A DNA stretch of 64,000 nucleotides from Schmidtea polychroa (GCA_044892525.1 CM097885.1:192510001-192574000), one strand, 5' to 3'; positions 1 to 39,150 are shown, counted from the stretch's first letter. Program-made: numbers and translations. The notes: a model not told the origin generated them from the letters alone.

Positions 1-540
1 TTTTGATTTATTCAATTTCTTAGATGTCGCCATCGACCTCGAATTTCTATGTTTAAAACTTTTACTGAAAATGAGTTTCAAAGAGTTAGAAAATACGAGT
101 TTATCTTATTAATGTTTTGTCTCAAATCATTTGCGATAAGGTTACCATATTATATTAGAGTTGTTCACATTACACAAATATTGTATACAAAGTTGTTATT
201 AATTTATAATCAATTAAATTTCATTTTTAGGTTTCTAAATGTTCTAAGTAGTGTTTCTTCTCGAGAATTTCCCGAGAATTTTTTTTTTAAAAATTGTAAT
301 GTTTTTTTTATATTTTTTCGAGCAAATTATTTTAACCGCATCAGTTCGGCATGTCTGGGATTTTATGTCTCTATTAAACATTCCATTTTCTTCGAATACA
401 GATATTGGAAGATATCGAGTGCACATGCGTTACTGGTGCTATTAAATAACTGTTTGTGTGTCTGCATGTAAGTGAGCGAGCGAGAAAGAAAGAACGCACG
501 CATGCGTCACTATTTATTATAAAAAAAATCAAATTTTATT

Positions 541-1140
541 TCATGTAAATCCATCTGGCATAAAGCCGAAGGGGAGAACGGTTCTCACCCTTATGTAATC
601 TACAGCTTTTATTCTTTTAGTCTTCGGATGCTAGAGTTAATAACTCCCGCATCAAACGCGGTTTTCCCTGAAAACTTCAGTCAGGTTTGGTATCAGATAA
701 TCCTTTCTGAAGCTCCTGGCATTGGCTCATTCATATTTTATCTCATTGAGGTTGGTTTTTTTCCCGGTAAGCATCGTTGAGCATAGTAGGGGATAAACAT
801 GGCTAAGCATAAACATGATCAGTCATGGCCCATATAGATGCAACGGACATTCATTCAAAGGTTAGTTCTTTCGGATTGATTAGGAGAGGCTGAGCAACTC
901 AAGATGAGTTTAGGTTTCCGCCGGATCCAAGTGGATTCTGAAGTAGTTCAAGCATATCTGGACGGATTTCCCAGTTTTAGCAGATGGAGTAGCAATGGTA
1001 AGGAGAGGCTGTTCAAGCTTCTGTCTGATTAGTTTAAATGAGGTTATGGGCTCTAAAAAACGGAATTTAATAATTCGGAGTAAGAAGACTCCATTTGTGA
1101 TTTTTGTAGCGGTCAAATATTATACATTATATTATAGTAA
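541..1140 (-). pseudogene. Unassigned decayed coding-like segment
   Basis: GC-richer than its flanks. One minus frame reads ...LLTIATPSAKTGKSVQICLNYF...KAVDYIRVRTVLPFGFMPDGFT-TGA with AATAAA directly after the stop, but has about 8 internal stops. No family recognised. Confidence 0.25.
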
Positions 1141-1283
1141 AGATTGGAAGGAATGGTGTAAAGGAAGAGGAGGTTTTATGAATAGGTTGTTATATTAGAT
1201 ATATAAACAACTTAAAGGTATTATCAGTGAGGCGGAGCCCCTACAAGGACTCCTATATTGACCCACTGATAATATACATACGC

Positions 1284-2588
1284 TTAGTTGCGTTTTCTTT
1301 TCTTCTTTCTAATATTACAATTCTTTAGTTCAGGTATTCGATTCGTCATTTTATTTTTTAGTTTTTCGGTTATTCTTTTTCTCTGTTGAATGAAGGATTC
1401 ATATACACACTTAACCGTGTGAGATGTTAGGTAGGTATCATATTTTAGAGCTCTTACGCTATAGTTAGTAAGAAAGATTTCGAAGAAAAAATTTCTGTAT
1501 TCTTTTTCTTTTTTGTTATCATCATCAGGCATACTTTTTTTGCCATTCCTTAACTTCCGAATAGCAATACTTCGCATTTCAATGCTGTCTTCAAGGAAAT
1601 TGGAATAAATCGCATTATAAGTTTCTTCGGTTTGATATTTACAATATTCGAAGTTAGATAGGTCATCAATAGTGCCAAGGATTTCGAAGAACACATTCAT
1701 AAGTGTCTTGTTTTCAATTTTCTTTTTATCAATCGTATTTGGTTTAGGTAATATTTTGAAATTAATTTTTAGGTATGGTAATTGTTCAGATTTTTTGACC
1801 ATATTGGACTCACCTCTGAAGGTCAAATCAGGTCTCAGCTTCTTTATGTCAGACAGTTTATTAAATATAAATAGTTCAGTAATGTCTGGAAGATATTTAC
1901 CGTAGGTTAGCTCGGATATATTCTTAGTACATTGAATCTCATAGAAACCATTCATCAATTCTTTCTCCTCATAGTATTCGTCATTATTACGTTTCTTCGG
2001 AATTTGTTTATCATTAAAAGGTTTTTCAATTTTTGGCATTGGTTCAAGTTTCTTGACGTTTTTAAGCTTGTTAATAAGGGTCAGATTATCTTCTCTTTCT
2101 CTTGATAGTTTCATATAGTATTCCACGTCAAGGTCTGTCATTCCGTAATCGGTTGGGTATTCGTTGTCATTTGTAAGTGTACAGCCAAAAAAGTAATTAA
2201 TATCTTCTTTACTGTAGTCGAGTTGGGTCTGAAGATCGTCTGAGTTGAGATAAGAAATGGAATCAGAATTAGGAACAGAATCAGAATTAAGATCAGAATC
2301 TGAATTAAGATCAGAATCCAAGTTGGGATCAGAATCAGAATTAAGATCAGAATTAGAATTAAAATCGGAAACAGAATTCTGATCGGCATCAGAATTTGGA
2401 TCGTAATCAGAATTTGAATCGGAATCAGAATTTGGATCATTATGAGTAATACATTCATCAATATCATTTTTAGTTTCAATTATACTATCATCAATAAGAT
2501 TGATATTATAAGCAGTCGGCGATTTAGGGGATTTTGGAATTTGGGCTATTGGTAGATCAATATTCAGGTTTATTTGGTTATCCTTTTT
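1284..2588 (-). CDS. Orphan ORF, 434-codon open frame: acidic N/S/D repeat tract, K/N/E-rich body, basic C-terminus (RKKKRKRN); probably the 3' part of a longer disrupted gene
   Basis: The frame is open from 2588 to the stop at 1284, longer than the 345-aa track ORF, which starts at a TTG. A 1.3-kb stop-free frame is unlikely by chance at this AT content. No domain recognised. Confidence 0.6.
   Translation of the reverse strand, partial: KKDNQINLNIDLPIAQIPKSPKSPTAYNINLIDDSIIETKNDIDECITHNDPNSDSDSNSDYDPNSDADQNSVSDFNSNSDLNSDSDPNLDSDLNSDSDLNSDSVPNSDSISYLNSDDLQTQLDYSKEDINYFFGCTLTNDNEYPTDYGMTDLDVEYYMKLSREREDNLTLINKLKNVKKLEPMPKIEKPFNDKQIPKKRNNDEYYEEKELMNGFYEIQCTKNISELTYGKYLPDITELFIFNKLSDIKKLRPDLTFRGESNMVKKSEQLPYLKINFKILPKPNTIDKKKIENKTLMNVFFEILGTIDDLSNFEYCKYQTEETYNAIYSNFLEDSIEMRSIAIRKLRNGKKSMPDDDNKKEKEYRNFFFEIFLTNYSVRALKYDTYLTSHTVKCVYESFIQQRKRITEKLKNKMTNRIPELKNCNIRKKKRKRN
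2270..2440 (-). repeat. Degenerate 6/18-bp coding tandem repeat encoding (NSDSD[LP])n
   Basis: Repeated tcagaatt/gatcagaa units; translation DPNSDSDSNSDYDPNSDADQNSVSDFNSNSDLNSDSDPNLDSDLNSDSDLNSDS. Confidence 0.9.
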
Positions 2589-3207
2589 TTACTTTGGTAT
2601 TAGCCAAGATTGGTATTATCGGGATTCGTCGGGTTATTTTTAATAATGTTAAATGGTTTGGGAATTATTTGGGCAGTATCAATATTAGGTTCTTTAATTA
2701 GTTCTTCGTCATCTTTTTTGACTTTATCATCATTCTTAGTGTTTGTTAATAAGTATTCAAAACGCATATTATACTTAATCTTAAATTTTTTACGTTTAAA
2801 AATTTCGAGGTCAGATATTTTATCTTTTACGACAGAGTTATTGATTTTTATATATTTAGATATTAAAAATAGTTCATATCATATTATACTTAATTTTATG
2901 TTTTCTACGTTTAAAGATTTCTAGGTTAATAATTGGTTTTAGTGGAATAGGATTAGAGTAGTGGGGTCTTGGTAGGTTAATATAGATTGAATTTTTTGGT
3001 TCCCAAATTTTGACGGTCGGTTTTGGTATGGAGTAAGGAGGATTGATAGGGTAATTTCTCATTTGAGTTAATTCCTTTATCTTACATCTCTTGCTAACAT
3101 TTTTCGTGAGTCGGCCGGAGGCCGAAGAGCTGCGTTTGCTCAAAAATTTAATATCCAATGTAACATTTGCTGGGAGCCGGCTTCGGCCGGCGAGATGTGT
3201 ATATTAT
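2589..3207 (-). pseudogene. Frameshifted middle part of the orphan gene, with an internal duplicated peptide
   Basis: LEIFKRRKHKIKYNM (about 2925-2880) recurs as LEIFKRKKFKIKYNMRFEY (about 2812-2755). The first copy lacks 2 nt after ATG, causing a frameshift; further shifts lie near 2600. Confidence 0.5.
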
Positions 3208-3888
3208 CCTTTTCATCCTCCGAAGGAGGACGAAAAAATTTTTAGCATGGTCATCGGATCTGAAATTTGGTGGAAATATAAACAATTTATCCCTTAAATT
3301 TTCTTTGAATTTTTTAATTTTTCTATTTTTAATTTTTCTCTTTTTATAATTAAGTTTCACGTTATTAAGTTTTACGTTATTAAATTTTACTTTATTAAAT
3401 TTTACGTTAAAATCATTTATGAAAAAGTCATTAAAATAAATAATATTAAGATTATTTTCAAAAAATGATATATTTTTAATTCTCCGAGTATCTTTTTTAC
3501 ATTTTTTATAAATATTTTTATCAAAAGGATAATTTTTATTTTCATTAATTTTACTTTTATCGTCATTACGTATACTTTTAGCATTAGAATTTACATTAGT
3601 AGTTTTATTTTTAGAATCCTTATAAGATTTATTATTAATAATTTTATTTTTAAAAGCATTTTTAAAATCATTTGATAGGTAATTCTGATTATTAATTACT
3701 TTTAACTGCCATATTTCTATAGCCGCTCCAAACGCATTTAGGAAGTCAACGTGTTGTTCACGGACTAAGTTTCTTATGATGAAGCTTCCAAAGATAAGTT
3801 TATCGGCATATTTGTAAGTGTTTAAACTTATGTTCCTAATGTTGATGCCAATATTTTCCCAAATTGCGATTCGGAGATCCTTCGACAT
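3148..3888 (-). CDS. Orphan 246-aa ORF (globular-looking N-terminus, K/N-rich low-complexity middle with NVKLN repeats)
   Basis: Track ORF with an ATG start. It is in frame with the upstream 3919-4176 ORF across one TAG; a 108-nt GT-AG intron (4007-3900, gtaaaa...ttttcag) would remove that stop in frame. A 15-bp tandem repeat lies at about 3351-3410. Confidence 0.5.
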   Translation of the reverse strand: MSKDLRIAIWENIGINIRNISLNTYKYADKLIFGSFIIRNLVREQHVDFLNAFGAAIEIWQLKVINNQNYLSNDFKNAFKNKIINNKSYKDSKNKTTNVNSNAKSIRNDDKSKINENKNYPFDKNIYKKCKKDTRRIKNISFFENNLNIIYFNDFFINDFNVKFNKVKFNNVKLNNVKLNYKKRKIKNRKIKKFKENLRDKLFIFPPNFRSDDHAKNFFVLLRRMKRIIYTSRRPKPAPSKCYIGY

Positions 3889-5027
3889 TACAATGGTTCC
3901 TGAAAAATAGTTAAGAAGCTAAAAAGCAATAAAAAACTCATTGATTTCTGCCCCAGTGCTAGCGAATGTTATATGAAGCAATTCTACTAAGCTCTGAGGA
4001 ATTTTACCAAATATTTTTAGCATGGTCATCGAATCACGTGTCAAGGGCAAACAAATGACAACAATTTCTTTTTCACACTGTACTTGCACTATGGAAGACA
4101 GTGGTACTTGCACTTTCAACAAGACAGGTGCGTGTATCCTCAGCAATAAAATTTTGCAACCTCTCATCGTATACACCTAAATCCGAAATATAAAAGTCTC
4201 TATAATGCACGTTGGTGTGTTCATCAGTGGATGACTCACCATTTATGAGAATGTGAAGTTATTTACTTCATTTCATTTATTCAATTTTATAAGTAAGATT
4301 TTTTAATTTAAGTAACTTTTAAGGTTTGAATTTTGATTTTATATAATTATGAGATCATTATTCAAGTTCTGAAATATTACTTGTAGTCAACATTTTGATT
4401 ATAAATTATTTTTAATTAATTTTCAGGGGTTTTTTTTAAGGATTTTTATGACATTTTATGAATTTATTTGGAATTATTTCGATAAAATGTAAGTTAGATA
4501 TATTTTTAACTATAAATAAATAAAGAAATCATCAAACACATTAATTTATTTATACATTTAAGAAAGAAGCGGCGTAATTTTTAAAGTTTTTGTAATCTTC
4601 TTTCTCCAGCTCATTGATATAGTGAATTTTGTCATTTTATGTAATTCTATGAAGTTATTATTTTTTATACAAGTTATTAAAATTTACGATTTTCGAATTT
4701 TTTTCTGCAAATGTCGATGGACCTTGTTGAATATTAGAAATAATACCTTCACACAAAATATTTTAAAATATTTTAATTATTTGTAATTAAATGAAAAATT
4801 CTTACATTGTCAATTTTTCACCTTCGCAAAAGGTAGCGTTTCCAGTGAAATATCTAAAAATCTAAAGAAATAGTTACTTCAAATATATTTTATAAATAGA
4901 TCTTACGATCTTTTATCCTCCTTTACTCAAAAACTCAAAGTAGAGTTGTCCGATTGAAAATCCAAAATTTTTCCCCAACGAATTTTAACATATTAAAAAT
5001 AATGATATGTTAACAATATGTTAATTA

Positions 5028-5252
5028 CCGTATATACTCGTTTATAAGTCGAGAAATTTACTTCAAATTTTCAAGTCAAAATAGCCACTTCGACTTATAC
5101 TCGAGTCAAAAAACGTACAAATTAATTTTAAATGAAATCATTAAATCTTTTTTTTATTTTTGTTACTTCGACTTAAACGCGGGTTTCCAATTTAGGACTT
5201 AAAAACCTCTTAAAATTTACTCGACTTATATGCGATACTTTTAACTTTACGG
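5028..5252. mobile_element. pogo/Tigger-like MITE
   Basis: TA|ccgtatatactcg..ataagtcgag at the left; ctcgacttata...tacgg|TA at the right; TA target duplication. Confidence 0.7.
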
Positions 5253-5571
5253 TACTTTTAACTTTCGGAATAAAATACTATTTTATATTATGTGTGCTGT
5301 GTTTCTATGTAAAATTATTTTTCTGTCACTTTCTCAATTCCTATAATAACACTTTTAACTTTCGGAACATTAAATTTTTGCACACAGGTAAGTTTGTGTG
5401 TTTCTATATTATAATTTTATCGATTTTCTTTAGATTATAGAAACTTTTATATTTCCGATTTAGGTGTAGAGGCTATGTTTTGATTATGTTTGTACTTCAT
5501 GAATCATTGATTAAATTTGTCACTATATCACAGATTAAATACATATTTATTTTTTTAGTACGGCTTATCAA

Positions 5572-7402
5572 ATGAGCAAAATATACAAAGATTGTTGGCA
5601 ATATTTTAAGAAATCTAGCACCAATAAAGAATTGGCAGTTTGCACTTTATGTTCAAAAAATCTCATGTGCAAAGGTTCGGCGACGATTGGTCTTCACCGA
5701 CATCTCGAAGCTATCCACCAATATATAAGAGAGGAAGAGACAACCGAAAACAGCTCCGCACCAAAGAAAAGGAGATACTTCGAGGAAACAGAAGGAAGTG
5801 GAAATATTTCAAAGTTTCTAGTAAAGCAGACAATGGCGGAAAAGGTGTCAAAACTGGCAGCAGTAAATAGATTTTCATTTAATGCCATCAGCAAAAGTGA
5901 ATTTACCCGGAAAAGTTTTGCCAATATAGGCTTTAGACTACCGCTAAACCCAACAGATATTATGAAATTAATGATGGAATTTTTTAAAAATAAAAAAGAA
6001 GAATTTATTAAGAATATACAAAGTTTAAAATTAAAAGAGAAAAAATTTAGCGTATCCATTGATGAATGGACTAGTGCTAATAATAAAAAATACATGGATG
6101 TGCACATATATTGCAGTTCTGGGGTCTCGTACAATCTCGGATTGGTACCTAAAAATGGTAGTTGCACAGCGGAAAAACTTTACGAGTTAGATTTCTTGAA
6201 ATTAAATTTCTACGGTGTCTCTATTGAATAGGATATAATATCTATAATGAGTGATGGTGCTGCTTTAATGCAAAAATTTGGGATAGAGTCACCAGCACAT
6301 CAACAACTATGTTATAATCATGGCATCAATTTGGCAGTTTCAAAAGTTATTTATACAAACGAAAATAATGGTATTGAATTGCAAAATGATGAAAGTGATA
6401 CTATAAGTGAATCTGAAGTGAACGAATATGATTCTGATGTTGAAATTATAGATGTCCGTTTACCAATACCAATTGAAGATACAATTATTGGAATTCGTCA
6501 GATTGTAAAGGTATTTAAACGACGCTCTGTAAAAAATAGCGTGTTGCAAAAATATGTGCAAGATTTCGAAAAAAGAAATTATCTCTAATATTGGATTGTC
6601 CAACAAGATGGAACACAATGGAAAAAATGATTGAGTGGTTTCTTCAGATAAAAACACAAGTTAAAAAGGCCTTAGTGGAATTAAATCTCATTTATATGAG
6701 GAATGAAGAATTTATTAAAACGGTTGAAGTGTTATTGGCGACATTACGTCCTGTTGGTTTAACTGTGAAAGGTTTGAGCCGAGAGGATTCGACATTATTA
6801 AGAGCGGAAGGAACGCTAAAATATTTATTCACTACATTAGAAAAAAATGATAGAGAAATAAATGGCAAATTACTTTTGGAAATTAAAAATGAAATTTATA
6901 AAAGGTGAAATAACAACATTATATCTCTATAAACACCTTCAAAACCCTGATATTCTCCAATAGACTGATGTACAAATATTGTTCAAAAAATGAAATAAGG
7001 AAAACGGCCAAAGAAATATTATGCAGACTTTTTGGGAGAATTCACCAAAATATTAGGGAAGATAACAACTTTGATCTTGCCGAAGACGAAGTTTGTTTTG
7101 TTCCATCTTATTCAGAAGAATTATCTCTGCAAGAGCAATTAAATTTATCCATAAAAGAAACATTAAAATAATCAACTCCTGCTGTCGAGGGTAATACATC
7201 ATTTAAGACTCTCGATAAAGAGTTCAGTATATTCAAAGCAACAGGCAAAATAACAGCAAATTTCCAACAGGTAAAAGACGCATTATCTACAATTAAACCT
7301 AGGTCAACACAAAATGAACGCAATTTTTCAGTTGCGAATGATTTTGTGACGAAAAAACTTACTCGAATGGCCGATTCCACGCTAGATGCTTTAAGTTTTT
7401 AG
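5572..7402 (+). pseudogene. hAT transposase pseudogene with N-terminal BED zinc finger
   Basis: WQYF..CTLC...LHRHLEAIH (BED finger), IDEWTS, SDGA, CYNH, DCPTRWN and C-terminal PRSTQNERNFS dimerisation motif, split across several frames by stops and frameshifts. Confidence 0.95.
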
Positions 7403-7512
7403 AAAATCTATTTTAATAAAGTAAATAAGTAATTATTTTAATATTGATTTATTTAGAATGTAATAAAATTATTTATATAGTAATAATTTTGTTTTGTATA
7501 TTATAAGAGGCA

Positions 7513-7628
7513 TTGGAAAAAATAGAAATTTTTTAGTCTTATTGAAAAAATAGAACATAAATTTGTTAATTGAAAAAATAGAAAAAAAATTGGATCATTA
7601 AAAAGACTAAAAAATTCTATTTTTTCAA
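7513..7628. mobile_element. Small MITE-like inverted repeat with internal gaaaaaatagaa repeats
   Basis: ttggaaaaaatagaaattttttagtctt (7513-7540) is nearly the reverse complement of aagactaaaaaattctattttttcaa (7603-7628). Confidence 0.55.
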
Positions 7629-7662
7629 TTTTCCATATTATAATTATTGTAAAAATGCGATT

Positions 7663-7795
7663 TGGTACTTATTTTCCTCTATAACTAATTTTATAATATT
7701 AAATATCTTAACTAATTGGCAATTCATATAGTAACTCACCAATTAGTTAAGATATTTAATATTATAAAATTAGTTATAGAGGAAAAAAAGTACCA
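7663..7795. repeat. Foldback palindrome, 57-bp arms with a 19-bp spacer
   Basis: Arms 7663-7719 and 7739-7795 are reverse complements with one mismatch. Confidence 0.9.
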
Positions 7796-8531
7796 GATCC
7801 AAAAAATACATTTCATTTGTTCATTTTTAAAAAGCTATTTTTTTATTATATACATATATTTATAAATATGTATAAGCTATTATTGTTATTATTACCCCCA
7901 TAGTCTCACAGATGTGTTCATAATTTCTTAATTTATTATATTAAAGTATCAATCTGATGCATCAATCTATTTTCATAGCAATCGCGTAAATCTATGTAAA
8001 TAATAAGCATTGTTCGCATTTATGTATTCCTTTGCAAGCACATCTGCATATGTAATTTAATAAATTTTTCNNNNNNNNNNNNNNNNNNNNNNNNNNNNNN
8101 NNNNNNNNNNNNNNNNNNNNNNNNNNNNNNNNNNNNNNNNNNNNNNNNNNNNNNNNNNNNNNNNNNNNNNNNNNNNNNNNNNNNNNNNNNNNNNNNNNNN
8201 NNNNNNNNNNNNNNNNNNNNATTTTTTACTAGATTTTTCATTTTCTCGAGAATCCGAATGTGAAACATCTTTTATCGAGAAATGAAAAAAGTCGAGAAAT
8301 CAGAAACACTAATTCTAAGCGAATCAGTTTACTCGGATTAAGGAAGAGATATTGATATAGCCAATTTCTGCACTATAATTTTCATTAATCAATTTCTATA
8401 ATTTTCTTGCAATATAATTTTCTTTGTAATATTTTTTTTCAAATTTTTTATATATTTATTGATAATTATAATTAAATTATGTAATAGAAAATAAGAATTA
8501 AACAAGAAGATAACAATACTATTAATATACA

Positions 8532-9302
8532 CAGGGCCTAGGAGAGAGAGTGCGGGGCCCGGGGCAAAACTTTTTTTTGGGGCTCCTTTTTAATAATTAA
8601 AAAAAATATAGTTAGCGACAACACAATATAAAACAAATTTTATTATATTAATGATTTACGGGCTTTTGAAATTGCAAATTTATCAATTATTTCACTAAAA
8701 TTTAGGTTTCTTGCAATATCGTTATTAATATGCAGCATTGCCAATCCATTTAGCCGCTCTTGTGCCATTGTAGATTCCAAGAAATTCTTAATACGTTTTT
8801 GAGCTGAAAACGTACGTTCAAACTCGGCTACATAAACCGCGATTGTCAAAAATATTCTTAATACAACTACGAGATTTGGAAAAATTGATTCCAAATTCAT
8901 TTCAATAATAGATTTAAGCACTTTTTAGTAGAGAAATTTTAATGAAATTTAAAATATTCTTTCGAATTCCACGCTAGTTGGGTTTAAATTAAGGACCACA
9001 ATATCATATAATTAATAAACAGATATTTTTAAAAATATTTTTAAAAATCTCTTATTCGTGGATTTTAATAACTATCAAGCAATTTTAAATGACGAATTCC
9101 TAATCTTAGATCAATCTGATTTATTTAAAAACATGTTAGATTGATATATAAGAGCAAAGAAGTTATATCAATAGTCCATTTTTAAAATTGTTGAATTTTT
9201 AAAAATTAATTTTTGTTTCCAAAAAAATTTCTTGAAATAAAATTTTGAAGATTTGAGGCCCGGGGCCAGTGGCCCCTCTGGCTCCGCCTCTCCTAGGGCC
9301 CG
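8532..9302 (-). mobile_element. Non-autonomous hAT (ZMYM1-type deletion derivative)
   Basis: TIRs cagggcctaggagag / ctctcctagggcccg; perfect 8-bp TSD aatataca (8524-8531, 9303-9310); internal hAT dimerisation-domain remnant FPNL..LRIFLTI...ERTFS..KRIKN (8643-8921). Confidence 0.93.
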
Positions 9303-9525
9303 AATATACATTAATATTATTTATAAGTAGTACTTTGTTTTTGTTTTACTGACGATTTTTTATTGTATGTAAAATAAAAAGATTAAAGAAGTTAAAATTT
9401 TCAAAAATTTGAATTCAAGTTGAATTTGTTATAAATTTTTAGTCTGAATGAACGTCATAAGTGGAGGGAGATGTTTTTAACGCAAAAAAAAGAAGAAAAA
9501 TCTTTTTTTTCTTTGAAAGTTATTT

Positions 9526-12500
9526 TCATACACATTTTCGTCGAGATTTTTCTTTTGCAAATTTATCAATTATGTGATCGCAATTTAGTTTAGTTAAAAA
9601 TTCATATTCAATATACAAAAGTGTCACCTAATTTAACTGGTCCTCCTGCATTTTGTTCCTTACATAATATTTTATTCTTTTTAGACCGGAAAAAGAAATT
9701 TCTGCCGAAGCATATGATATGGGTAATTTTAGAAATATTCGTAAAATTATTTCCACATTGGGAAATGTTTCAATGAAATCTAATGCTAATGTATCACCAG
9801 CTGAATATTCTTCCTTTACTTCTTTTATAAAAAACAGAAATTGTTCCACTTCACTTTCGAATTGACATATATTAATATCCTTCTCATTCATTATTTTTTT
9901 TCATTGTTTGGCACAGAAACATTGAAGAATATTTTGTTGAGGTCCGTAAATTAAAATAAATTTAAATGAAATTTAGGTTAATTATTTAAATAAAAAGTAA
10001 GTGAAGAAAAATACAAATAAAAGCGGGATCATGCACAGAATTGATAGTAAAGGAAAGTACGATGGAAGCAATATTGGAAAATGCCAAAAGCAATTACGAA
10101 AGGCAAGAATTCGGAAATCCGAGAAAAATTAATAAATTGTAAAATCATCGAAATCAAATTGGGAAAACGGGACAGGAATAGAGTAGCTAATGGTCATCAA
10201 GATGATGGTTAGGGATTTATCAGAAAATAGTTAGGAAGGGTCGAAAAGCATTCAAATGTGTAAAAAAAGAAAATGTTAATTAATTAATTAATTGGCTAAT
10301 AGAAAACCCCAGCTAATGGGAAACCCGAGCCAATGGAGAACCCGAGAGATGAAGGAAACCCGAGTTGGGTAAACAAGTAGAAAAGTAAACAGAAGGAAGA
10401 TTTGGGCCCATTAGCTTGACACAATGATTAATTGGAAAAGAGCAAGGAGAAGATAGTGCGTGTAGAAAGGCCGGACGGGCCATTAATTATCTTTGTTCGT
10501 TGGACCATTATGGGTGACAGCCGAAGCAGATACGTGGAAGTAAATGTCAAGTGAAAGATTGGCTCGGCAATAAACATTTGTCATCCCGATTTCGAGGAGT
10601 ATATAAGGAAAGGGAAAATCAGAGCAAATAGGCATTTTGCCTCACGTAGGGTAAGAAGAACTCGAGCTTAGGAAAAGGCAAAAACGAATTTAGGAGATTA
10701 GGGAAAAAGAAGAGATAGAATAAGAATAAAAAGTGTGAAAAGGATCAAATCAAAGAAAATAAAGGAAAACGTTGGCCAAGAGAACCTAAGAAAATAAAAG
10801 GTGAATATTATCTTTATCAAAGCATCAACACCGAGCGGAGAATCGGTCAAACGTAACTTTGATTATTGATTGTAAAGTGGTGAGAAAAGATTGTGAATTT
10901 TGTTATTTCAATATACGTTGGGTTGTTATTGTTTTGATCTGAAGGACACGAGGAGTCAGAGGTAACCGATTTAAATTAACCAAAAACCCAAAAATTTTAA
11001 AATTTTGAAAAATGTCTTCAAATTCTTTTTTCCTGTGACTAAATTCGGTTATCAACTGATCACAAATTGTACAAAACGTATTGCATACGAAATCTTCTTT
11101 TTCAGAAAATACGTGATCGTTATCACTTCGTTCATCAAAACACATTTTCGTTTCTTCATTCTTCTTTCTTCAAATTTTCTACTTGTATAGATTTCGGCCT
11201 CTTTCTCAACAGTTTCAAATTCATTTCTAAATTGTCTTATAAAACAAAGTGAATTCAATAAAGATACACCTTGAAGGACGGTGCACTCTGCTGATTGCAA
11301 AGACTTACTGGTAGCGTTTATTCTTTGGATGATCTTGTCCCAAATAATCATAATCAAAACTGTTTCAAATTTAGTCATATTTGTTCATCCATCAATGCTT
11401 CCTTAATTTTATGCTATCCACATTTTAATGCTAGAACAGCATCTGCTCTTGCAGACCATCTTGTATCGAAAATTTTTTACCGTCAATTTTGTAGGGCAAT
11501 CTTACAGTTTTTTCAATAAAACATTCCATCGATGAGTCAAAGCATTGAAGAAAGTGAATAAATTTTGAAAGAATAAAAAATATCGAGTTGCACTACCACA
11601 GCTTTCAGCTGCAAGGTTACCAACAAGGTTTAACGAATGTGTGGAATAAAGAATATAGAATATGTTTTTAATGCGACCTTACAATGCTGTGTACTTCCCA
11701 GACATATTTGCAGCATTATCGTACGACTGTCCTCTACAAAGTTTAATATGAACCTGCATATTTTTTAACTTTAAAAGTAACTGTTCTTTTCAATAGGCGA
11801 AAACCCTATGAATCTTTCTTTTATATCTCCAGCTGGCAGCACATATCTAAAAATAAAAGTCGATTGATCGACATGGGAAATATCTGGCGTCGAGTTTACA
11901 ATAATGCTGTAAAAATTTGCAGCTTTTACTTTTTCAATTATTTGAAACAAAACAGAATCGCTAAATTATTGTATAAACTCGTCACGTATTTGATGAGATA
12001 AATAGTTGACATTTCCTCGTCCACGATTTCCATATGTTTCCAAATGTAATTTTAAAAATTCGTCATATTCACTTAGATATTCCAAGCACGTTAAATAATC
12101 ACCTTTTCTACTAGAAGATTGGCTTTCGTCATGTCCTCTAAATCCTATACCAAGACGTGCAATTAATTTTATTGTTGATACTATCCTTCGTAAGATCCCT
12201 CCAATAATTCTCTTCTTTGAGTGCCTGCTGCACTAATTTTGCATCTATTCGATGTAACGCTGAAGAACGTCTGTATAATTTCCACATGTATTTTATATGT
12301 TTCTTTGAAACTTCGTGTCCAGATAAAGCTTCTGTAAGATGTCGGCAATTCTGATAACCTTCGATTAACTTAGAGGTCGAATTAGAAAACATTTTACAAT
12401 GGTAGCAGTCTCAGAAAAACAAGCCAATTTCTGATTTTTTTTTCCTAAGCAATTTGTCGGTAAATATGGCCGTCATGTAAACCTCTTAAATATGTTTGAG

Positions 12501-12930
12501 TGCCATCAGTATAAAGATGTTTCAAATTTCACCATTTACCAACGTTGTTTGGTTTATTACGTATTGCAAATTCTATCATTTCGTCTGCTGAAACTTTTGG
12601 CCAGAGTGCAATATTTTCCATAATATCTAACCGACCTGCTTTCGCATCGAATGCCTTTAAAATTTCACTCTTTCCTTCAGATTCAATTTTTAACTCTCCT
12701 GTGGTTGTTGATACAGTCTCCAAATTTTGTTTCGACACAGTATCTTTTTCAAACTCTTGATGTTCCAACAATGGAACATTTTCTTTAATTATAGATGCAC
12801 TAAATTGTGACGTGCCTTGATTTGGAGTTAGAGAGATAAATTTCAACAAATAATCTCTTTGTTGATTATTGATTTCTTCTCTACGTTTTATTTCTTTTCT
12901 CTTCTCAGCCCCCGATTAATACGACTTCAT
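9526..12930 (-). pseudogene. ZMYM1-like hAT transposase pseudogene, interrupted by an insertion at 9935-10968
   Basis: MKSY*SGAEKRK N-terminus, NSTPDISHVDQ, CRGQSYDNAANMSG, HSLNLV, TRWSAR and FPNVEIILRIFL...KRIK C-terminus. A hAT-type terminus caatggcggatacag (minus strand) ends at 12962. Confidence 0.93.
9935..10968 (+). mobile_element. Probable solo LTR (or LTR-like insertion) with 4-bp TSD
   Basis: Starts TGTTGA; ATTT is duplicated at 9931-9934 and 10969-10972; aacccgag enhancer-like repeats with CCAAT, a TATA-like gtatataagg near 10639, then AATAAA. Removing it restores the hAT frame. The right end is non-canonical (no CA); an internal TCAACA ends at 10830. Confidence 0.7.
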
Positions 12931-13300: not shown

Positions 13301-14962
13301 TTATATTAAATTAACATTATTTTCAAACCATAATTTCATTTCACTTTTTGCTTGTTTATATGCTTTACAATCTGCTGAATTAACTGGGCAATGAATAATT
13401 GACCGATACTTGATAAATGCCTCTAAAGAAGTCACATATTCTTTCAGTATATCCTTTAAATGATTAAAATTATTAAAAGAATAATCTAAATTCTCTATAG
13501 AATAATCCAACAAAAAGTATCGTACTGTCAAAAAATCGTCACAAACCCTTTGAAGGTAGTTCATTTCTATGAACAAGTAATCGATATATAGGAAATGGGA
13601 AGTTTTTTTCAACCATTTCAAATTAGGATTATTGGAATTCAAAATGTGAAATAGAAATTGAAATTCTACATCAATAACTTCTAATTTATAATTAAAATCA
13701 AAATGATTGACTTTCAAAGCGCTGAAAAAAGTTTCTATTTTTTCATGTGCCTCGAAATTTTGGAAATGAGAAACAACCAAACTGATGTTATTAGCAAAAT
13801 CTGACTTCGTCAAAACTCCTAAAAGTTTCAGCAATTTTTGTGTATTAAAGTTAGATATGGTCGAAATGAAGGATGATAAAGAAAACAAATTCAATTCTTT
13901 GCTAACATATTTAACGAAAACTGTTTTTGAGAAAAAATTTATCAGTTTATGCTTTAGAGAAATCCGATTGGCTAAAGTTGATTTTTCGACATTTTCCCGA
14001 ATCTCGTCAAATCCAAGCGAATCTATTGGACAACTACCTCTAGTAATTATAAATTTATTTACGCAGGCCTTACACAATTTATGATCGCATTTTGTAAATT
14101 GACCATAATTATCATTTGAACCGCATTTCACATTACAAATTAGGCAGGAATTTTCATCGATAATTATTTCCGGATTTTTTATTGATTTAAACAACTCACT
14201 ATTTTTAGAAACAAAAATTATTGTCAAAGCTGCCATTGACAAATCAATATTATTGATGATTTTTATTTTGTTTGAAATGATTTCCAATAGATTATTGATT
14301 TTTCTATAACTCGGAATGCCTAAATCATAATGCCATGGAAAATCAATGAAATAATCAAAATTAATTATTGAATCGAATATATTTTGGATGCTCCTAAAAT
14401 TAACTACTGAAATTTCGAATTCTGTTAAATTATTTTTTCTTTCTTTATCGAGGAATAAATTGAAAGCATTATACTTTTGACATCTATAGATTCCAATGAT
14501 CGCTGATTGACGAATCCTTTCAAACATTAATTTGCAAGTATTTTCCAAATATTTGGCATCGTTTAATTCGATTTCTTCTTTATTTTCCGACAAAGATTTC
14601 AGAAAATCTAACATAGATAGTATTGAGCTTTTAATGATCTTTATTATATTACTAATGCATGAAAAGCAATGAACCCAGAATTCTTCAATACTTGGAATCA
14701 ACAATTGCGGATGGTTTTTTATAACTTCTTCTTTCAAATCTGATATTGAATTAAAGGAGAATGGGAAATAATTTACATCAAAATCAGACGAAACGAAAAT
14801 CTTTGTTACTTCAGTTCTATCAAGAGGACACGTTACATCTGACTGAAAGATTAATTCAATACCGCAAATAAAACAATATTCATGTCGACATTTATCAAAT
14901 TGTACAGCTTTCTCAACAATATCATAGCATATGGGACATACATTTTCGTCCTCGTAATTCAT
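13301..14962 (-). CDS. Intronless protein with two C3HC4 RING fingers (putative E3 ubiquitin ligase), about 553 aa from the second Met
   Basis: CPIC..CRHEYCFIC..TCPLD and CLIC..CDHKLCKAC..SCPID in a 1.7-kb intact ORF. The Met at 14962 directly precedes RING1; the upstream extension is a poly-Ile AT repeat. Confidence 0.9.
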   Translation of the reverse strand: MNYEDENVCPICYDIVEKAVQFDKCRHEYCFICGIELIFQSDVTCPLDRTEVTKIFVSSDFDVNYFPFSFNSISDLKEEVIKNHPQLLIPSIEEFWVHCFSCISNIIKIIKSSILSMLDFLKSLSENKEEIELNDAKYLENTCKLMFERIRQSAIIGIYRCQKYNAFNLFLDKERKNNLTEFEISVVNFRSIQNIFDSIINFDYFIDFPWHYDLGIPSYRKINNLLEIISNKIKIINNIDLSMAALTIIFVSKNSELFKSIKNPEIIIDENSCLICNVKCGSNDNYGQFTKCDHKLCKACVNKFIITRGSCPIDSLGFDEIRENVEKSTLANRISLKHKLINFFSKTVFVKYVSKELNLFSLSSFISTISNFNTQKLLKLLGVLTKSDFANNISLVVSHFQNFEAHEKIETFFSALKVNHFDFNYKLEVIDVEFQFLFHILNSNNPNLKWLKKTSHFLYIDYLFIEMNYLQRVCDDFLTVRYFLLDYSIENLDYSFNNFNHLKDILKEYVTSLEAFIKYRSIIHCPVNSADCKAYKQAKSEMKLWFENNVNLI

Positions 14963-15598
14963 AATTATTATTATTATTATTATTTTATATAAAATATTCA
15001 AACAATTTAAATTTCAAAATTACATTTTTTATTTTGAAAAATTACATAGATATTTGAATAATTTAATTATATAATTTATTTTTATTAATTTTAATAAATT
15101 ATTTATTAAAATATAATTTTTCATAATATCAAAATTTATGTTTTTACTTAGTCTAGTAGTGAAGCTGTGAAAAGAATAAAATTTCTTAAAATAAAATTAA
15201 AAATATATTTAAAATTATATTTATATATTTTAATTTTTAAAATTTATTAAAAATTGAATGATGATTTTATGTTTGAATCACTAAAATTAATATAATTAGT
15301 TTTAGATAATATTGTGTAATAAATTTTATAAAATTAATTAAATTGCATAATAATTTTTATGGTGAAATGAAATAAGGAGAAATCATCAAATCAAACAATT
15401 TAATGATTGATATAGTTATCAGGAATCTCGAAAGTCTTAAATTATCAGCAAATAACAAAGGTTTTTGAAAATTTATTCATAATGACATATGATGATTTTA
15501 AAATATATCATTTTAAAAGATTTTTTGTCCAAAACATTTCTCTCACCATAAAATTCCTTCAATAAAAACACCAGCAAACTAGTGATAGAAATGTCATT

Positions 15599-30452: not shown

Positions 30453-32964
30453 CAGGAATGCTCAACTTACAGCCCGCGGGCCGGACCCAGCCCTTTGGCA
30501 GCTAGAATGAATAGCCAGTAAACAGGCCCTTCGTTGACCAACAAGAAAATTATCATTAAAAGTCTTGCTGTGATTAGTCAGGCTATCAAAATCACATCTG
30601 GTTTGTATTTGCTTGCCAACTGTCCTGCAGCAGTGTATCTGTAGTAAGTATTTGATGTGGGCCAAATACCACCCTTTATGTTTAACTACAGTCCTACAAT
30701 TAGTGATTAATATGAGGTTTTCTGTAACTGTAAGCAAGCAGCCAATCAATGTTTCTTGTCTGGTTATTTTTGTATGAAGTATTGGCTTTATTGTTAAAAT
30801 CTTGTTCTATCTTGATTAAAAATTAAATTACATTGTACTATTGTTATCAAGTATTCAGTATTATTTAATAAAATATACAACCACTAAGAATGAACTCATT
30901 AAAAAAGGAAAGTAAACAGTGAATGCCGTTTAATTTAATGAACGGTGGACTCCAGAATATTTTTTTGTTGAATCTAAGAATATGTTAGTTTGCTTAATCT
31001 GTCAACAAACTGTTGCTGTTAGAAAAGAATTTAATACCAGACTCAGCATGCAGAAAAATTTGACGAGCTTAATGGCCAGCTGAGAAAGGATAAAATTCAG
31101 AACCTCACGGCAGCACTCTCAAGACAGCAAACATTATTTACAAAAGTGAATAAAGATGTGGAATGTGTAACCAAGGCGAGTTTTGAAATAAGCGAAATCA
31201 TTGCTTAAAAACTGAAACCATTTTCTTATGGCGAATTTATTAAAGAATGCATTGATGCAGTTGTTGATTGACTTTGCCCAGAAAAGAAACAACTTTTCTC
31301 AAGCATCAGTCTGTCTCGAATGACAGTGACAAGACGAATAGATGATATGGCAGATAACATCGAAGCCGTGTTGAAAGAAAAAGCAGAGAACTTCGATGCA
31401 TATTCAATTTGTTTGGATGAAAGCACTGACATGACAGAGACTGCACAATTAGCTATTTTTGTTCATGGAGTTGACACTGATTTCAACATTACAGAAGAAT
31501 TGCTAAAATTAGCTAGTATGAAGGGGACAACGACTGGAGAAGATATTTTTGATGAAGTTAAAGACACTTTGCAAGAAAATAATCTTGGTCTTTTAAAACT
31601 AACTGGGATTACAACAGATGGAGCTCCTGCAATGGTTGGGAAAAAGAATGGGCTTATTGGTTTGTTCCAGGCAGAGCTGAACAAATCCCAAAATAATACA
31701 GAACTTATTGCATCACACTGCATTATACATCAGGAAAATTTATGTGTGAAGCAGTTGAAGATGGACCATGTGATGTCAGTTGTTTTTAAAACTGTCAATT
31801 TTATCAGAGCACATGAATTAAATCACAGGCAATTTAAAGAATTTCTTGCAGACCTTGAGGTAGAATACTGTGATGTCATTTACTACAGTGAGGTTCGCTG
31901 GCTCAGCAGAGGAAAGGTTCTGCAGCGATCCTCGTCAAGAAATTTTGGTTTTCATGGAAATGAAGGAAAAGTTTGTTCCGGAGTTATGGATGCCAGTTGG
32001 ATTTTAGATTTAGCTTTTTTGGTTGACATCACAACTCATCTGAATAATCTTAATACAGCATTACAAGGTAAAAATCATCTAGTAAACAATCTTTATGATC
32101 ATGTGAAAGCATTTCAAGTCAAACTCAACTATGGAAATTTCAGTTTTCGAAAGGTGACACAGTGCATTTTCCAAGTCTGACTGGATGCAAAAAAACTAAT
32201 GAAGATTTGGAGAAAATTAAGAAGTATACTGAACAAATTTCAATTCTGAGAGTTCAGCACAAGATTTTCAGATTTCAAACATGATTTCAAATTATTTTCA
32301 GATCCATTCAATTTTAATGCAGAGGCTGCATCAGACTCAGTTCAAATGGAACTGATTGAACTTCAGTGCAACAGTGACCTGCAAAGAAAACATCACGAAA
32401 TATCTTTGATTCAATTTTACAAACTTTATTTTTCCCCTGCAACATTTCCATCAATTCGATTTCATGCGCTTAAAATGGTATCACTTTTTCCTAGCACCTA
32501 TATATGCGAACAGTTTTTTTCAAAAATGAAACTCACTAAAAGCAAAAACAGGTGCAGACTGACTGATTACAATCTTTCAAATCAACTTCGTGTGGCAACA
32601 TCAAATATTAAGGCAAACATTTCAGAACTGTGTCACGACAAAAAGTGTCAAATGTCACACTAGAGTGACGGGTGGCGATGATTCATGTTTTAGAATTTTG
32701 AGATGTATGGTAGTATTCTGTAAAACCAGATTTACTAAATAATTCAAATATTTTCATATGCAAAAGTAAAGTAAACATCTTGAAATTTAAAAGAATAGTA
32801 ATTTTAAGTTTATACTATGTCTAATATTTAACTTTAGAATTTAGACTTTAATACGTTTTGTTTAAATGTAAATTTTATTGAAACTTATTAAGTTTTTTCC
32901 GGCCCTTGACAACATCCCAAAATTAATAACCGGTCCTCAGATCAATACAAGTGGAGAATGCCTG
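30453..32964 (+). mobile_element. Full-length Buster/Charlie-clade hAT element
   Basis: TIRs caggaatgctcaac / gtggagaatgcctg; GGCCC-rich subterminal repeats; perfect 8-bp TSD gtttaaat (30445-30452, 32965-32972). Confidence 0.95.
30890..32663 (+). pseudogene. GTF2IRD2/SPIN-like (Buster clade) transposase pseudogene
   Basis: MNSLKKRKV..CLIC, LDESTD..AQL, TTDGAPAMVG, HCIIHQE, VRWLSRG and FPSTYICEQFFS; several frameshifts. Confidence 0.95.
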
Positions 32965-38159: not shown

Positions 38160-39150
38160 TTCTAATAAAAATATATAAAATAATAATGAAAATCAAATAT
38201 GATGATGAGAGAGATAAAGAGAGAAAAGGAAAGCGAGAAAGCTAAAAAGAATGAAATAGAAAAAGAAAGAGAAAAAGTAGAAAGATAGAGAATGAAAATA
38301 GAAAGAGAAAAATAGAGAGAAAGAGAAATAGAAAGATAGGGAGAGAAATAGAAAAAGAAAGGTAGAAAGAGAGAATGAAATAGAAAGATAACAATAGAAA
38401 AAGCGAGAAAGAAAGAGAAAGAGAACGCCACGATAAAGAAATAAGGAGTGAAATAGAGAAAGTAAAAGAAAGAAAAATAGTGAGAAAGAGAGAATGAAAT
38501 AGAAAAGGAAAAATAGAGAGAAAGCGAGAGAGAAAACAAGAGAGAAATAGAAAAATAGATAAATAGAAAATGAAAAAATAGAAAGATAAAAATAGAGAGA
38601 AAAAGAAATAGAAAGATAACAATATAGAGCGAGAAAGAAAGAAGAAAAGCACGATAAAGAAATAAAGAATGAAATAGAGAAAGTAGAGAAAGAAAGAAAT
38701 AGAAAGAAAAATAGCCAGAAAGAGAGAATGAAATAGAAAAGGAAAAATAGAGAGAGAAAACAAGAGAGAAAGAGAAAAATAGAGAAATAATGAAATAGAA
38801 AGAGAAAAATAGAGAAAGAGAAATAGAAAGAAACAGGTAGAAAGAGAGAATGAAATAGAAAGAGAAAGGTAGAAAGAGAATGAAATAGAAAGATAACAAT
38901 ATAGAAAGCGAGAAAGAAAGAGGAAAAGAGAGAAGGTACGATAGAGAAATAAAGAATGAAATAGAGAAAGTAGAGAGAGAAAGAAATAGAAAGAAAAATA
39001 AAGAGAAAACAAGAGAGAAAGAAAAAAATAGAGAAATAGAAAGAGAAAAACAAATAGAATTAAATAGAAAGAGAGAGAAAGCACGAGAAAGATAAAGAAT
39101 GAATGAAATAGAAAGAGAAAGCGAGAGAAAAAAAGAGATAGAAAGAGAGG
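38160..39150 (+). repeat. About 1-kb polypurine (GA/AAATAG) satellite with higher-order repeats
   Basis: Almost only A/G on the + strand; the landmark gataacaat..gcgagaaagaaag..acgata recurs at 38387, 38615 and 38892. Confidence 0.9.

What the first reader, a model, noticed from the sequence alone, without database searches (positions are those of the whole stretch)
249..8311. An 8-kb hAT unit that appears to carry several kb of non-transposon cargo
Seen: matching termini at 249 and 8311, shared CGAGAA subterminal repeats and a 7/8 8-bp flank duplication bracket a BED-hAT transposase pseudogene plus about 3.7 kb of unrelated coding-like DNA (541-4260) on the opposite strand. Known: hAT elements make 8-bp TSDs and are usually about 2.5-4 kb. 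Inference: either the element moved with this cargo (a gene- or virus-carrying hAT), or the cargo inserted later into a resident copy.
Basis: partly seen in the sequence, partly recalled or inferred. Interest (0 to 1): 0.8.

Follow-up and report, generated by a model that had tools for sequence, protein, structure and literature searches.

The report
Dead hAT transposon with passenger DNA
This is one old, broken copy of a hAT "cut-and-paste" transposon whose front non-coding arm holds about 4.9 kb of extra DNA: a decayed gene with no known relatives and a small nested mobile element. Nothing in a single copy shows that the transposon ever moved with this load.

Summary
The ends at 249 and 8311 match 10/11 in inverted orientation. 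The flanks are an 8-bp repeat matching 7/8. CGAGAA repeats cluster at the two ends and nowhere else in the window. Between the ends lies a broken BED-zinc-finger hAT transposase gene.

The only relative found (L001, 52% protein identity) starts with the same CGAGAA repeats. Its start codon lies 0.5 kb in, and it has no second gene.

The extra DNA runs from 541 to 5468, not to 4260, and is at least two things:
- 541-4171 is a decayed gene of about 960 codons on the minus strand with a 0.74-kb non-coding tail. It has no TE, viral or other homolog.
- 4172-5468 is a 1.3-kb AT-rich non-coding block. It is bounded by sharp 35-nt inverted repeats with TA at both edges, so it is probably a nested non-autonomous transposon. 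It carries a bantam-seed hairpin.

Without both blocks the element is 3,135 bp, a normal hAT size.

The left end, the passenger DNA and the transposase lie on one gap-free stretch. Only the last 91 bp lie beyond the N gap, and the matching flanks tie them to this locus.

One copy cannot show whether the gene block moved with the element. I lean to secondary acquisition (0.45) over co-mobilised cargo (0.35). Interest is modest.

The parts
241..248 (.). Left copy of the 8-bp target-site duplication (GTTCTAAG)
   Evidence: Matches 8312-8319 at 7/8, P about 1.3e-3 given the ends. It fits the hAT target pattern nTnnnnAn (pattern recalled from the literature, not tested here).
249..540 (+). Left arm of the hAT: terminal inverted repeat (249-259), CGAGAA subterminal repeats (258-278), then non-coding DNA
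   Evidence: The exact 10-mer is found only here and at 8311. CGAGAA cluster. The same repeat type opens the relative L001. The inner limit of 540 is approximate; it is set by the rise in GC.
541..1283 (-). Non-coding tail downstream of the passenger gene, GC-richer than its surroundings (39% against 28% for the window)
   Evidence: No ORF longer than 68 codons. No Rfam family. It folds somewhat better than shuffles (z -2.75, only 20 shuffles) and has a strong hairpin just after the gene's stop codon. No similar sequence elsewhere in the window.
1284..4171 (-). Passenger gene, broken, once about 960 codons. It has an Asp/Ser/Asn-rich repeat and four copies of a roughly 70-residue helical module (modules within 1329-2231)
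   Evidence: Longest stop-free run is 434 codons against a maximum of 157 in shuffles. Module alignment A4. Breaks: 1 in-frame stop and 3 frame changes; one frame change goes with a 115-bp tandem duplication that encodes the same peptide in two frames, and one with a GC-rich hairpin-forming stretch of about 160 bp. No homolog in Pfam, PHROGs, NCBIfam, PDB, 5.8e9 protein clusters, 1.84e9 representatives, IMG/VR or phage records.
4172..5468 (.). 1,297-bp AT-rich (24% GC) non-coding block bounded by 35-nt inverted repeats (33/35) whose outermost bases are TA. Probably a nested non-autonomous TIR transposon
   Evidence: It is the best inverted repeat in 1-9000 (94% against 77% or less for the other inverted pairs that far apart). 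The arms end sharply on both sides. The 25-mer of the arm occurs only at these two places, against 0 expected. Longest stop-free run inside is 87 codons.
4315..4376 (+). Hairpin with a bantam-family seed (GAGAUCA) in its 3' arm, inside the nested block
   Evidence: Rfam mir-753, full-length match, 53.7 bits, E 6e-11, below the gathering score of 62. Fold -22 kcal/mol, z -4.2. The seed assignment of miR-753 comes from PMC4842261.
5469..5571 (+). Short spacer between the nested block and the transposase start codon
   Evidence: Read directly. Together with 249-540 it gives 395 bp of 5' non-coding DNA, comparable with 498 bp in L001.
5572..7402 (+). BED-hAT transposase gene, broken (about 610 codons)
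   Evidence: zf-BED E 6.7e-6; DUF659 E 2e-4, below the cut-off. 50% identity to the relative's two ORFs over 464 of their 516 residues. Breaks: 3 in-frame stops and 2 frame changes; one frame change is shared with the relative. Pfam Dimer_Tnp_hAT was not detected in the C-terminal piece.
7403..8070 (+). 3' non-coding arm (19% GC) with a 141-bp near-perfect palindrome at 7659-7799
   Evidence: DNA fold z -14.5.
8071..8220 (.). Assembly gap (N, length estimated), left as it is
   Evidence: It lies in non-coding DNA. What it hides is unknown.
8221..8311 (+). Right end: four CGAGAA sites (8243-8298) and the terminal inverted repeat (8301-8311)
8312..8319 (.). Right copy of the target-site duplication (ATTCTAAG)

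Best explanation
An autonomous-type BED-hAT transposon of ordinary size (about 3.1 kb) inserted here by cut-and-paste and made the 8-bp duplication. That is shown by the termini, the flanks, the subterminal repeats and the transposase. The copy has since died: its transposase carries stops and frame changes.

Its 5' non-coding arm now holds 4.9 kb of extra DNA from at least two separate events.

1. A 1.3-kb non-coding element with 35-nt terminal inverted repeats and TA at both edges nested itself at the 5' edge of the passenger gene. This is inferred from the anatomy.

2. A 3.6-kb block arrived that carries one long intronless gene of unknown function plus its tail. It has no terminal repeats, no flanking duplication, no poly(A) and no transposon enzyme. 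It therefore did not come in as a standard transposon insertion. I infer that it was picked up by a repair-type or fusion-type event in the non-coding arm, the part of a hAT that tolerates additions.

I lean to the view that this happened in this resident copy and that the copy never moved with the load. The evidence for that order of events is weak.
For: - Ends, flanks and subterminal repeats are non-random.
- The same CGAGAA repeats open the only relative found. There the start codon is at 499 and there is no second gene.
- The element minus the two blocks is 3,135 bp, and its 5' non-coding DNA is then 395 bp against 498 bp in the relative.
- The extra DNA is composite. The 4172-5468 block has sharp 35-nt inverted repeats at 33/35, found nowhere else in the window. 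This shows that the arm has taken at least one later insertion.
- The long open frame of the passenger gene stops being open within a few codons of that block's edge.
- The neighbourhood is a transposon graveyard, so nesting is the local norm. Other hAT remains lie at 8643-12849, and PolB and Gypsy pieces lie further on.
- No copy of the cargo, or of the layout, exists elsewhere in the window.
Against: - The gene block has no hallmark of any insertion mechanism, so 'inserted later' is as unexplained mechanistically as 'carried along'.
- The passenger gene and the transposase are about equally decayed: 4 breaks in 2.9 kb against 4 private breaks in 1.8 kb. That is what one expects if both became neutral at the same moment, when this copy landed. 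The counts are too small to weigh much.
- The passenger gene sits wholly in the non-coding arm, opposite in strand, and leaves both ends and the transposase frame untouched. A tolerated cargo would look the same.
- The only relative is distant (52% identity), so its compact layout says little about this family.
Confidence: 0.45

Rival explanations
1. Cargo-carrying hAT. The 3.6-kb gene block was already part of the element when it landed here. It was either captured earlier, for example when two neighbouring ends were mobilised as one unit, or it is a regular second gene of this family, arranged back to back with the transposase. The 1.3-kb block then nested into it after landing.
For: - One 8-bp duplication brackets the whole unit, and 1-8070 is contiguous.
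- The cargo lies only in the non-coding arm and spares the ends and the transposase.
- The two genes show similar decay.
- On the far side of the nested block, a short minus-strand open frame with a start codon runs up to the block's edge. The transposase start is fewer than 100 bp further on, which is compatible with a divergent gene pair (pieces read apart).
- There are precedents. A complete 9.5-kb hAT with a DUF659-type transposase carries a captured histone H3 sequence in fungi (PMC6710886). Pack-hAT elements, and capture by joint mobilisation of neighbouring insertions, are known in plants (PMC8903248).
Against: - There is only one copy.
- The one relative has no second gene.
- No vestige of internal termini marks a fusion. 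Only 8-of-10 matches to the terminus lie near 5297 and 5396, without CGAGAA, and both are inside the nested block.
- No parental gene or paralog was found.
- The short open frame beyond the nested block is only 11 codons, which chance would give.
Confidence: 0.35
2. Assembly artefact. The scaffold join at the gap, or a collapse of repeat copies inside the contig, has stitched parts of different loci together. On this reading the 8-kb unit does not exist as one molecule.
For: - The N gap 8071-8220 separates the right terminus from everything else.
- All right-end hallmarks lie beyond the gap.
- The window has six gaps and is repeat-rich.
Against: - The flanks on the two sides match 7/8 (P about 1e-3), which ties the right end to the same insertion as the left end.
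- The left end, both extra blocks and the transposase are on one N-free stretch.
- No second copy in the window could have been confused with this one.
Confidence: 0.1
3. The gene block is of viral origin, so this is a virus-carrying hAT.
For: Only general features: an AT-rich, intronless, orphan ORF with hairpins after it.
Against: - No match in IMG/VR viral contigs, PHROGs, phage records, Pfam or 1.84e9 protein representatives.
- Codon make-up is the same as that of other ORFs in the window.
- There is one gene only and no virus hallmark gene.
Confidence: 0.03

Closest known systems
Autonomous hAT transposons with a BED zinc finger (Ac/hobo/Hermes superfamily)
   Same: Short terminal inverted repeats, an 8-bp target duplication, short subterminal repeats at both ends, one transposase gene with an N-terminal BED finger, and a core size of about 3.1 kb.
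   Different: This copy is dead and is 8 kb long, because 4.9 kb of unrelated DNA sits in its 5' arm. The Pfam C-terminal dimerisation domain was not detected.
Histone-H3-carrying complete hAT of Pseudocercospora fijiensis and relatives (PMC6710886)
   Same: A full-length hAT (9.5 kb there) with TIRs, an 8-bp TSD and a DUF659-type transposase in which Dimer_Tnp_hAT could not be identified, plus a captured coding sequence inside.
   Different: There, hundreds of copies share the layout and the parental gene is known. Here there is one copy and an orphan passenger gene, so capture is not demonstrated.
Pack-TYPE (Pack-hAT) elements and capture by joint mobilisation of neighbouring insertions (PMC8903248)
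   Same: Foreign, low-copy DNA lies internally, and the family-specific sequence is confined to the ends.
   Different: Pack elements are non-autonomous and carry gene fragments with an identifiable parent. This unit keeps a whole (dead) transposase gene, and its passenger is a whole gene without a known parent.
Nested non-autonomous TIR elements with a TA duplication (Tc1/mariner- or Stowaway-like MITEs)
   Same: The 4172-5468 block has sharp terminal inverted repeats, TA at both edges, no coding capacity, and an internal hairpin that resembles a microRNA precursor.
   Different: At 1.3 kb it is long for a MITE. No second copy was seen. A TA duplication is too short to be evidence on its own.

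Membership tests
hAT superfamily | 8-bp target-site duplication | tested here: met
   GTTCTAAG / ATTCTAAG, 7/8, P about 1.3e-3 given the ends.
hAT superfamily | Short terminal inverted repeats (about 10-25 bp) | tested here: met
   10/11. The exact 10-mer occurs only at 249 (+) and 8311 (-) in 64 kb.
hAT superfamily | Transposase with an N-terminal BED zinc finger | tested here: met
   Pfam zf-BED, E 6.7e-6, 26.5 bits against a cut-off of 20.6. The relative P0001 gives the same hit.
hAT superfamily | hAT C-terminal dimerisation domain (PF05699) and RNase-H-like catalytic core | tested here: inconclusive
   PF05699 was not found in the C-terminal piece at E up to 1. DUF659, a hAT-associated domain, was weak (E 2e-4, below the cut-off). 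By eye the C-terminal piece has the usual hAT pattern, but that is not a test. No PDB sequence match.
hAT superfamily | Family-specific subterminal repeats at both ends | tested here: met
   7 of the 26 CGAGAA sites lie in 183 bp at the ends, P about 1e-12. L001 has all 7 of its sites in its first 75 nt.
Cargo-carrying / Pack-type transposon (transduplication) | Several copies with the same TIR-cargo layout and different target duplications | not testable with these tools
   No other copy in the window. The source genome is not in the searchable collections.
Cargo-carrying / Pack-type transposon (transduplication) | Identifiable parental host gene for the captured sequence | tested here: not met
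   No homolog of either half of the passenger gene and no paralog in the window.
TA-flanked non-autonomous TIR element (block 4172-5468) | Terminal inverted repeats with sharp outer limits, TA at both edges, no coding capacity | tested here: met
   35 nt at 33/35; the alignment decays at once outside the arms. Longest stop-free run is 87 codons.
TA-flanked non-autonomous TIR element (block 4172-5468) | Repeated in the genome | tested here: not met
   No second copy in the 64-kb window. The genome at large is not testable here.
bantam / mir-753 microRNA family (hairpin 4315-4376) | Match to the Rfam model at or above its gathering score | tested here: not met
   53.7 bits against a gathering score of 62, although E is 6e-11 and the match is full-length with the family seed. 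Expression is not testable here.

The most novel reading that the evidence does not exclude
This hAT family may be a two-gene element. Its second gene would be an orphan protein of about 960 residues with four helical repeat modules, set back to back with the transposase and moved along with it. Its transposase may also be read through a -1 frame change at a run of A. That frame change is shared by the window copy and by an otherwise open relative 52% identical in protein. Such recoding is not known to me for eukaryotic cut-and-paste transposons.
Probability: 0.12. Interest if true: 0.6.

Novelty: new member of a known kind. Interest (0 to 1): 0.3.

Why it matters
If the gene block travelled with the element, this would be one of few animal examples of an autonomous cut-and-paste transposon carrying a whole extra gene. 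It would give a route by which lineage-specific genes, and a microRNA-like hairpin, are copied around a genome. As it stands it is one dead copy in a transposon-rich stretch, which is the ordinary state of such DNA. The practical value is for annotation:
- The 8-kb unit should be split into a 3.1-kb hAT, a nested TIR block and an orphan pseudogene.
- The hairpin should not be taken for a free-standing microRNA gene without expression data.

Tried and rejected
- **Known families for the passenger ORF pieces.** Pfam, PHROGs and NCBIfam gave only low-complexity Ser-Asp repeat hits.
- **Reverse transcriptase.** By eye the 5' part of the passenger gene recalled reverse-transcriptase motifs. Pfam at E up to 10 gave nothing, so I dropped it.
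- **Large protein searches.** The word-indexed search found no hit for either half of the gene. The full HMMER search of 1.84e9 representatives gave one marginal hit (E 1.3e-4) to a metagenomic repeat protein with a faint helicase-associated (HA) domain mark. Profile comparison gave 4.5% probability, so I rejected it.
- **Solved structures.** Neither single sequences nor the repeat-module profile matched anything in the PDB beyond affinity-tag-like noise.
- **Structure prediction.** The 318-residue part gave pLDDT 34 and the repeat module gave pLDDT 56. Both are too poor for a fold search, which I did not run.
- **Viral or phage origin.** No matches.
- **Structured RNA in the 541-1283 tail and the GC hairpins.** No Rfam family.
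- **Bacterial-type promoters and terminators.** Not above chance.
- **Insertion signatures at the edges of the gene block.** One 8-bp direct repeat (near 506 and 5519) fits the hAT target pattern. The sequences inside it are not inverted repeats, and matches of that length are expected by chance, so I rejected it.
- **Vestigial internal hAT termini.** Only 8-of-10 matches.
- **Other copies.**
  - Window self-comparison found none.
  - A terminus pattern in IMG/VR gave 70 chance hits, none related.
  - Scans for relatives in metagenome and viral contigs found none.
- **Source organism.** Exact look-ups of four window ORFs were not on record. The SRA run of the relative is not mentioned in any held paper.
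- **Terminal repeats of the neighbouring older hAT remains.** I sought them to tie the two flanks together and found none.
Full report

Yes.
- The sequence TAGTGTTTCT occurs exactly twice in the 64-kb window, at 249 on the plus strand and ending at 8311 on the minus strand. With the next base the inverted match is 10/11.
- Immediately outside lie GTTCTAAG and ATTCTAAG. With the ends fixed, a 7/8 match has a chance of about 1.3e-3 at this base composition.
- A scan for any inverted 10-mer pair 1-12 kb apart with a 7/8 flank finds 33 further pairs. Almost all lie in very AT-rich, low-complexity sequence.
- Neither of the two G/C-richer exceptions has a CGAGAA cluster at its ends, and neither brackets a transposase gene of its own, which I judge from where the recognisable genes lie.
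- The pair at 249/8311 has G/C-containing ends and flanks, and it brackets a transposase gene.
7 of the 26 sites in the window fall in the 183 bp next to the two termini (P about 1e-12). No other cluster of three or more exists.

**2. The transposase and its one relative**

The plus-strand gene 5572-7402 (about 610 codons) has a Pfam BED zinc finger above the curated cut-off and a weak DUF659 match. The Pfam hAT dimerisation domain was not detected in the C-terminal piece. I therefore call the hAT assignment well supported by anatomy and N-terminal domain, and incomplete for the catalytic and C-terminal parts.

The gene is broken by three in-frame stops and two frame changes.

The only relative in 5.8e9 protein clusters is P0001, at 52% identity. 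It is encoded on a 2,049-nt Logan contig, L001.
- L001 opens with CGAGAA-type repeats; all seven of its sites lie in the first 75 nt.
- Its start codon is at 499, with no second gene in between.
- This links the window's ends to the window's transposase as one family.
- It also shows that a compact 5' arm of about 0.5 kb is a possible ground state.

Scans of metagenome and viral contigs found no further relatives.

**3. The gap (the check the scan's program asked to be made first)**

The N run 8071-8220 lies in the AT-rich non-coding 3' arm. No reading frame depends on it, and the 'ORFs' that cross it are runs of X.

Positions 1-8070 contain no N. The left terminus, all the extra DNA and the transposase are therefore contiguous in the assembly. 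Only the last 91 bp, with the right subterminal repeats and terminus, lie beyond the gap.

Continuity across it cannot be tested with these tools, and I did not try to fill it. The matching flanks are independent evidence that the right end belongs to the same insertion. What the gap hides, including possible further insertions, is unknown.

**4. What the extra DNA is**

It runs from about 541 to 5468, which is 4.9 kb rather than 3.7 kb, and it has at least two parts.

*(a) 1284-4171, minus strand: a decayed gene.*
- Its longest stop-free run is 434 codons, against a mean of 87 and a maximum of 157 in 300 shuffles.
- Open stretches in changing frames cover nearly the whole span.
- A 115-bp tandem duplication encodes the same peptide in two different frames. 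This shows that the pieces once formed one ORF of about 960 codons.
- I count one in-frame stop and three frame changes. One frame change is tied to that duplication. One is tied to a GC-rich stretch of about 160 bp that folds into three tight hairpins.
- The protein has an Asp/Ser/Asn-rich repeat and then four copies of a roughly 70-residue, probably helical module.
- Codon make-up is like that of the other ORFs in the window, so it does not look compositionally foreign.

*(b) 541-1283: the tail downstream of the stop codon.*
- It is non-coding, at 39% GC against 28% for the window.
- A strong hairpin follows the stop codon directly.
- No Rfam family matches.

*(c) 4172-5468: a 1,297-bp block.*
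- It is 24% GC and non-coding.
- It is bounded by 35-nt inverted repeats at 33/35 identity. They end sharply on both sides and occur nowhere else in the window.
- The outermost two bases of each arm are TA. This is the anatomy of a nested non-autonomous TIR transposon with a TA duplication.
- A local inverted duplication made during repair would look similar. I put the odds at roughly 2:1 for the transposon reading.
- Inside is a 62-nt hairpin that matches Rfam mir-753 over its full length (53.7 bits, E 6e-11, below the gathering score of 62). It has the bantam-family seed GAGAUCA in the 3' arm (seed from PMC4842261).

**5. Homology of the passenger gene**

There is none.
- Pfam, PHROGs and NCBIfam gave only low-complexity hits.
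- The word-indexed search of 5.8e9 clusters returned nothing for either half.
- Full HMMER against 1.84e9 representatives gave one marginal hit (E 1.3e-4) to a metagenomic repeat protein. Profile comparison does not uphold it (4.5% probability).
- PDB sequences, IMG/VR and phage records gave nothing.
- Two structure predictions were too uncertain to use (pLDDT 34 and 56).

There is thus no evidence that the block is a transposon gene, a virus gene or a known cellular gene.

The source genome itself seems absent from the protein collection. Four exact look-ups failed, and the transposase found a single distant relative. The orphan status may therefore partly reflect sampling.

**6. How the unit most likely came about**

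Without the two blocks the element is 3,135 bp, and its 5' non-coding DNA is 395 bp, against 498 bp in L001. This fits an ordinary autonomous hAT that has gained DNA in the arm where additions do least harm.

*Shown:*
- a hAT insertion with its duplication
- later decay of the transposase
- a composite make-up of the extra DNA

*Inferred:*
- The 1.3-kb block is a later nested insertion.
- The gene block has no terminal repeats, flanking duplication, poly(A) or transposon enzyme. It therefore entered by a repair-type or fusion-type event rather than by standard transposition.

The time of that event is the open point.

| Reading | Points in its favour |
|---|---|
| Secondary acquisition in this resident copy | The one relative is compact. 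The arm demonstrably took another insertion. The region is a transposon graveyard, with other hAT remains at 8643-12849 and PolB and Gypsy pieces further on. |
| Cargo that travelled with the element | One duplication brackets everything. The ends and the transposase frame are spared. The two genes are about equally decayed. Cargo-bearing hATs are documented (PMC6710886; PMC8903248). |

I put secondary acquisition at 0.45, co-mobilised cargo at 0.35, an assembly artefact at 0.10 and a viral origin at 0.03. The small remainder is for readings not considered here.

**7. Comparison with what is known, and novelty**

The unit works like, and on the tested features is a member of, the hAT superfamily. 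The C-terminal domain test was inconclusive.

A hAT with internal passenger DNA is a known kind. A nested TIR element with a microRNA-like hairpin is also a known kind. I rate the finding 'new member of a known kind' with modest interest (0.3).

The most novel reading not excluded is a two-gene hAT family whose transposase is read through a shared -1 frame change (see section 8). I give it about 0.12.

**8. Seen in passing: a shared frame change**

The window copy and L001 change reading frame at the same alignment point, in a run of A, and in the same direction. L001 is otherwise open over all 516 codons on its contig, and the protein stays conserved in the shifted frame.

Two sequences cannot separate a shared, tolerated recoding site from two independent slips at a mutational hot spot.

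- While reasoning about the 4172-5468 block, I briefly read the minus-strand frame as if the block were removed and its edges closed. I built, printed and saved no such joined sequence, and afterwards read the two flanks only as separate pieces.
- These imply where breaks lie. I have deleted nothing, and I give only counts in this report.

Consensus lines printed by the alignment tools were not used.

Noticed in passing
window 5572-7402 and L001 499-2048: The transposase genes of the window copy and of its only relative (52% protein identity) change reading frame in the same direction at the same alignment point, in a run of A. The relative is otherwise open over 516 codons. This is either a shared recoding site or a mutational hot spot.
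   Followed up: partly
window 4315-4376 (+): A hairpin with a bantam-family seed matches Rfam mir-753 over its full length (53.7 bits, E 6e-11, below the gathering score). It sits inside the inverted-repeat-bounded block, so it may be a transposon-borne microRNA-like hairpin. It also hints at a protostome host. From memory, mir-753 is a flatworm family; I did not verify that.
   Followed up: partly
window 8643-12849 (-): Remains of other hAT-type transposase genes lie directly right of the element: two Dimer_Tnp_hAT pieces (8643-8921, E 7e-10; 9628-9891, E 1e-5) and a DUF4371 piece (11771-11950). The BED-hAT landed in or next to older hAT debris.
   Followed up: partly
window 13301-15001 (-): An intact, intronless 566-codon ORF with two RING fingers. 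Its very AT-rich codon make-up is the same as that of the passenger gene. It is not on record by exact look-up.
   Followed up: partly
window 7659-7799: A 141-bp near-perfect palindrome (61-nt arms, 97%) lies in the 3' non-coding arm of the element. The DNA fold has z -14.5. It could be a foldback-type mini-insertion.
   Followed up: no
window 3100-3260: Three tight GC-rich hairpins sit in an otherwise 20-30% GC gene. Beside them is a 27-nt stretch that repeats 4009-4035 at 93%. It looks like a small GC-cluster insertion or duplication inside the passenger gene.
   Followed up: partly
window 31320-32180 (+), 46079-47103 (+), 61315-61830 (+): Further mobile-element pieces: a DUF4371-type ORF, type-B DNA polymerase pieces (organellar/viral type, as in Maverick/Polinton elements) and a Gypsy-type RNase H. 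The whole window is repeat-rich and has six assembly gaps.
   Followed up: no
window 38162-39084 (-): Three overlapping 'ORFs' of 245-286 codons made almost only of Ser, Phe and Leu. This is a pyrimidine-rich simple repeat, not a gene.
   Followed up: no
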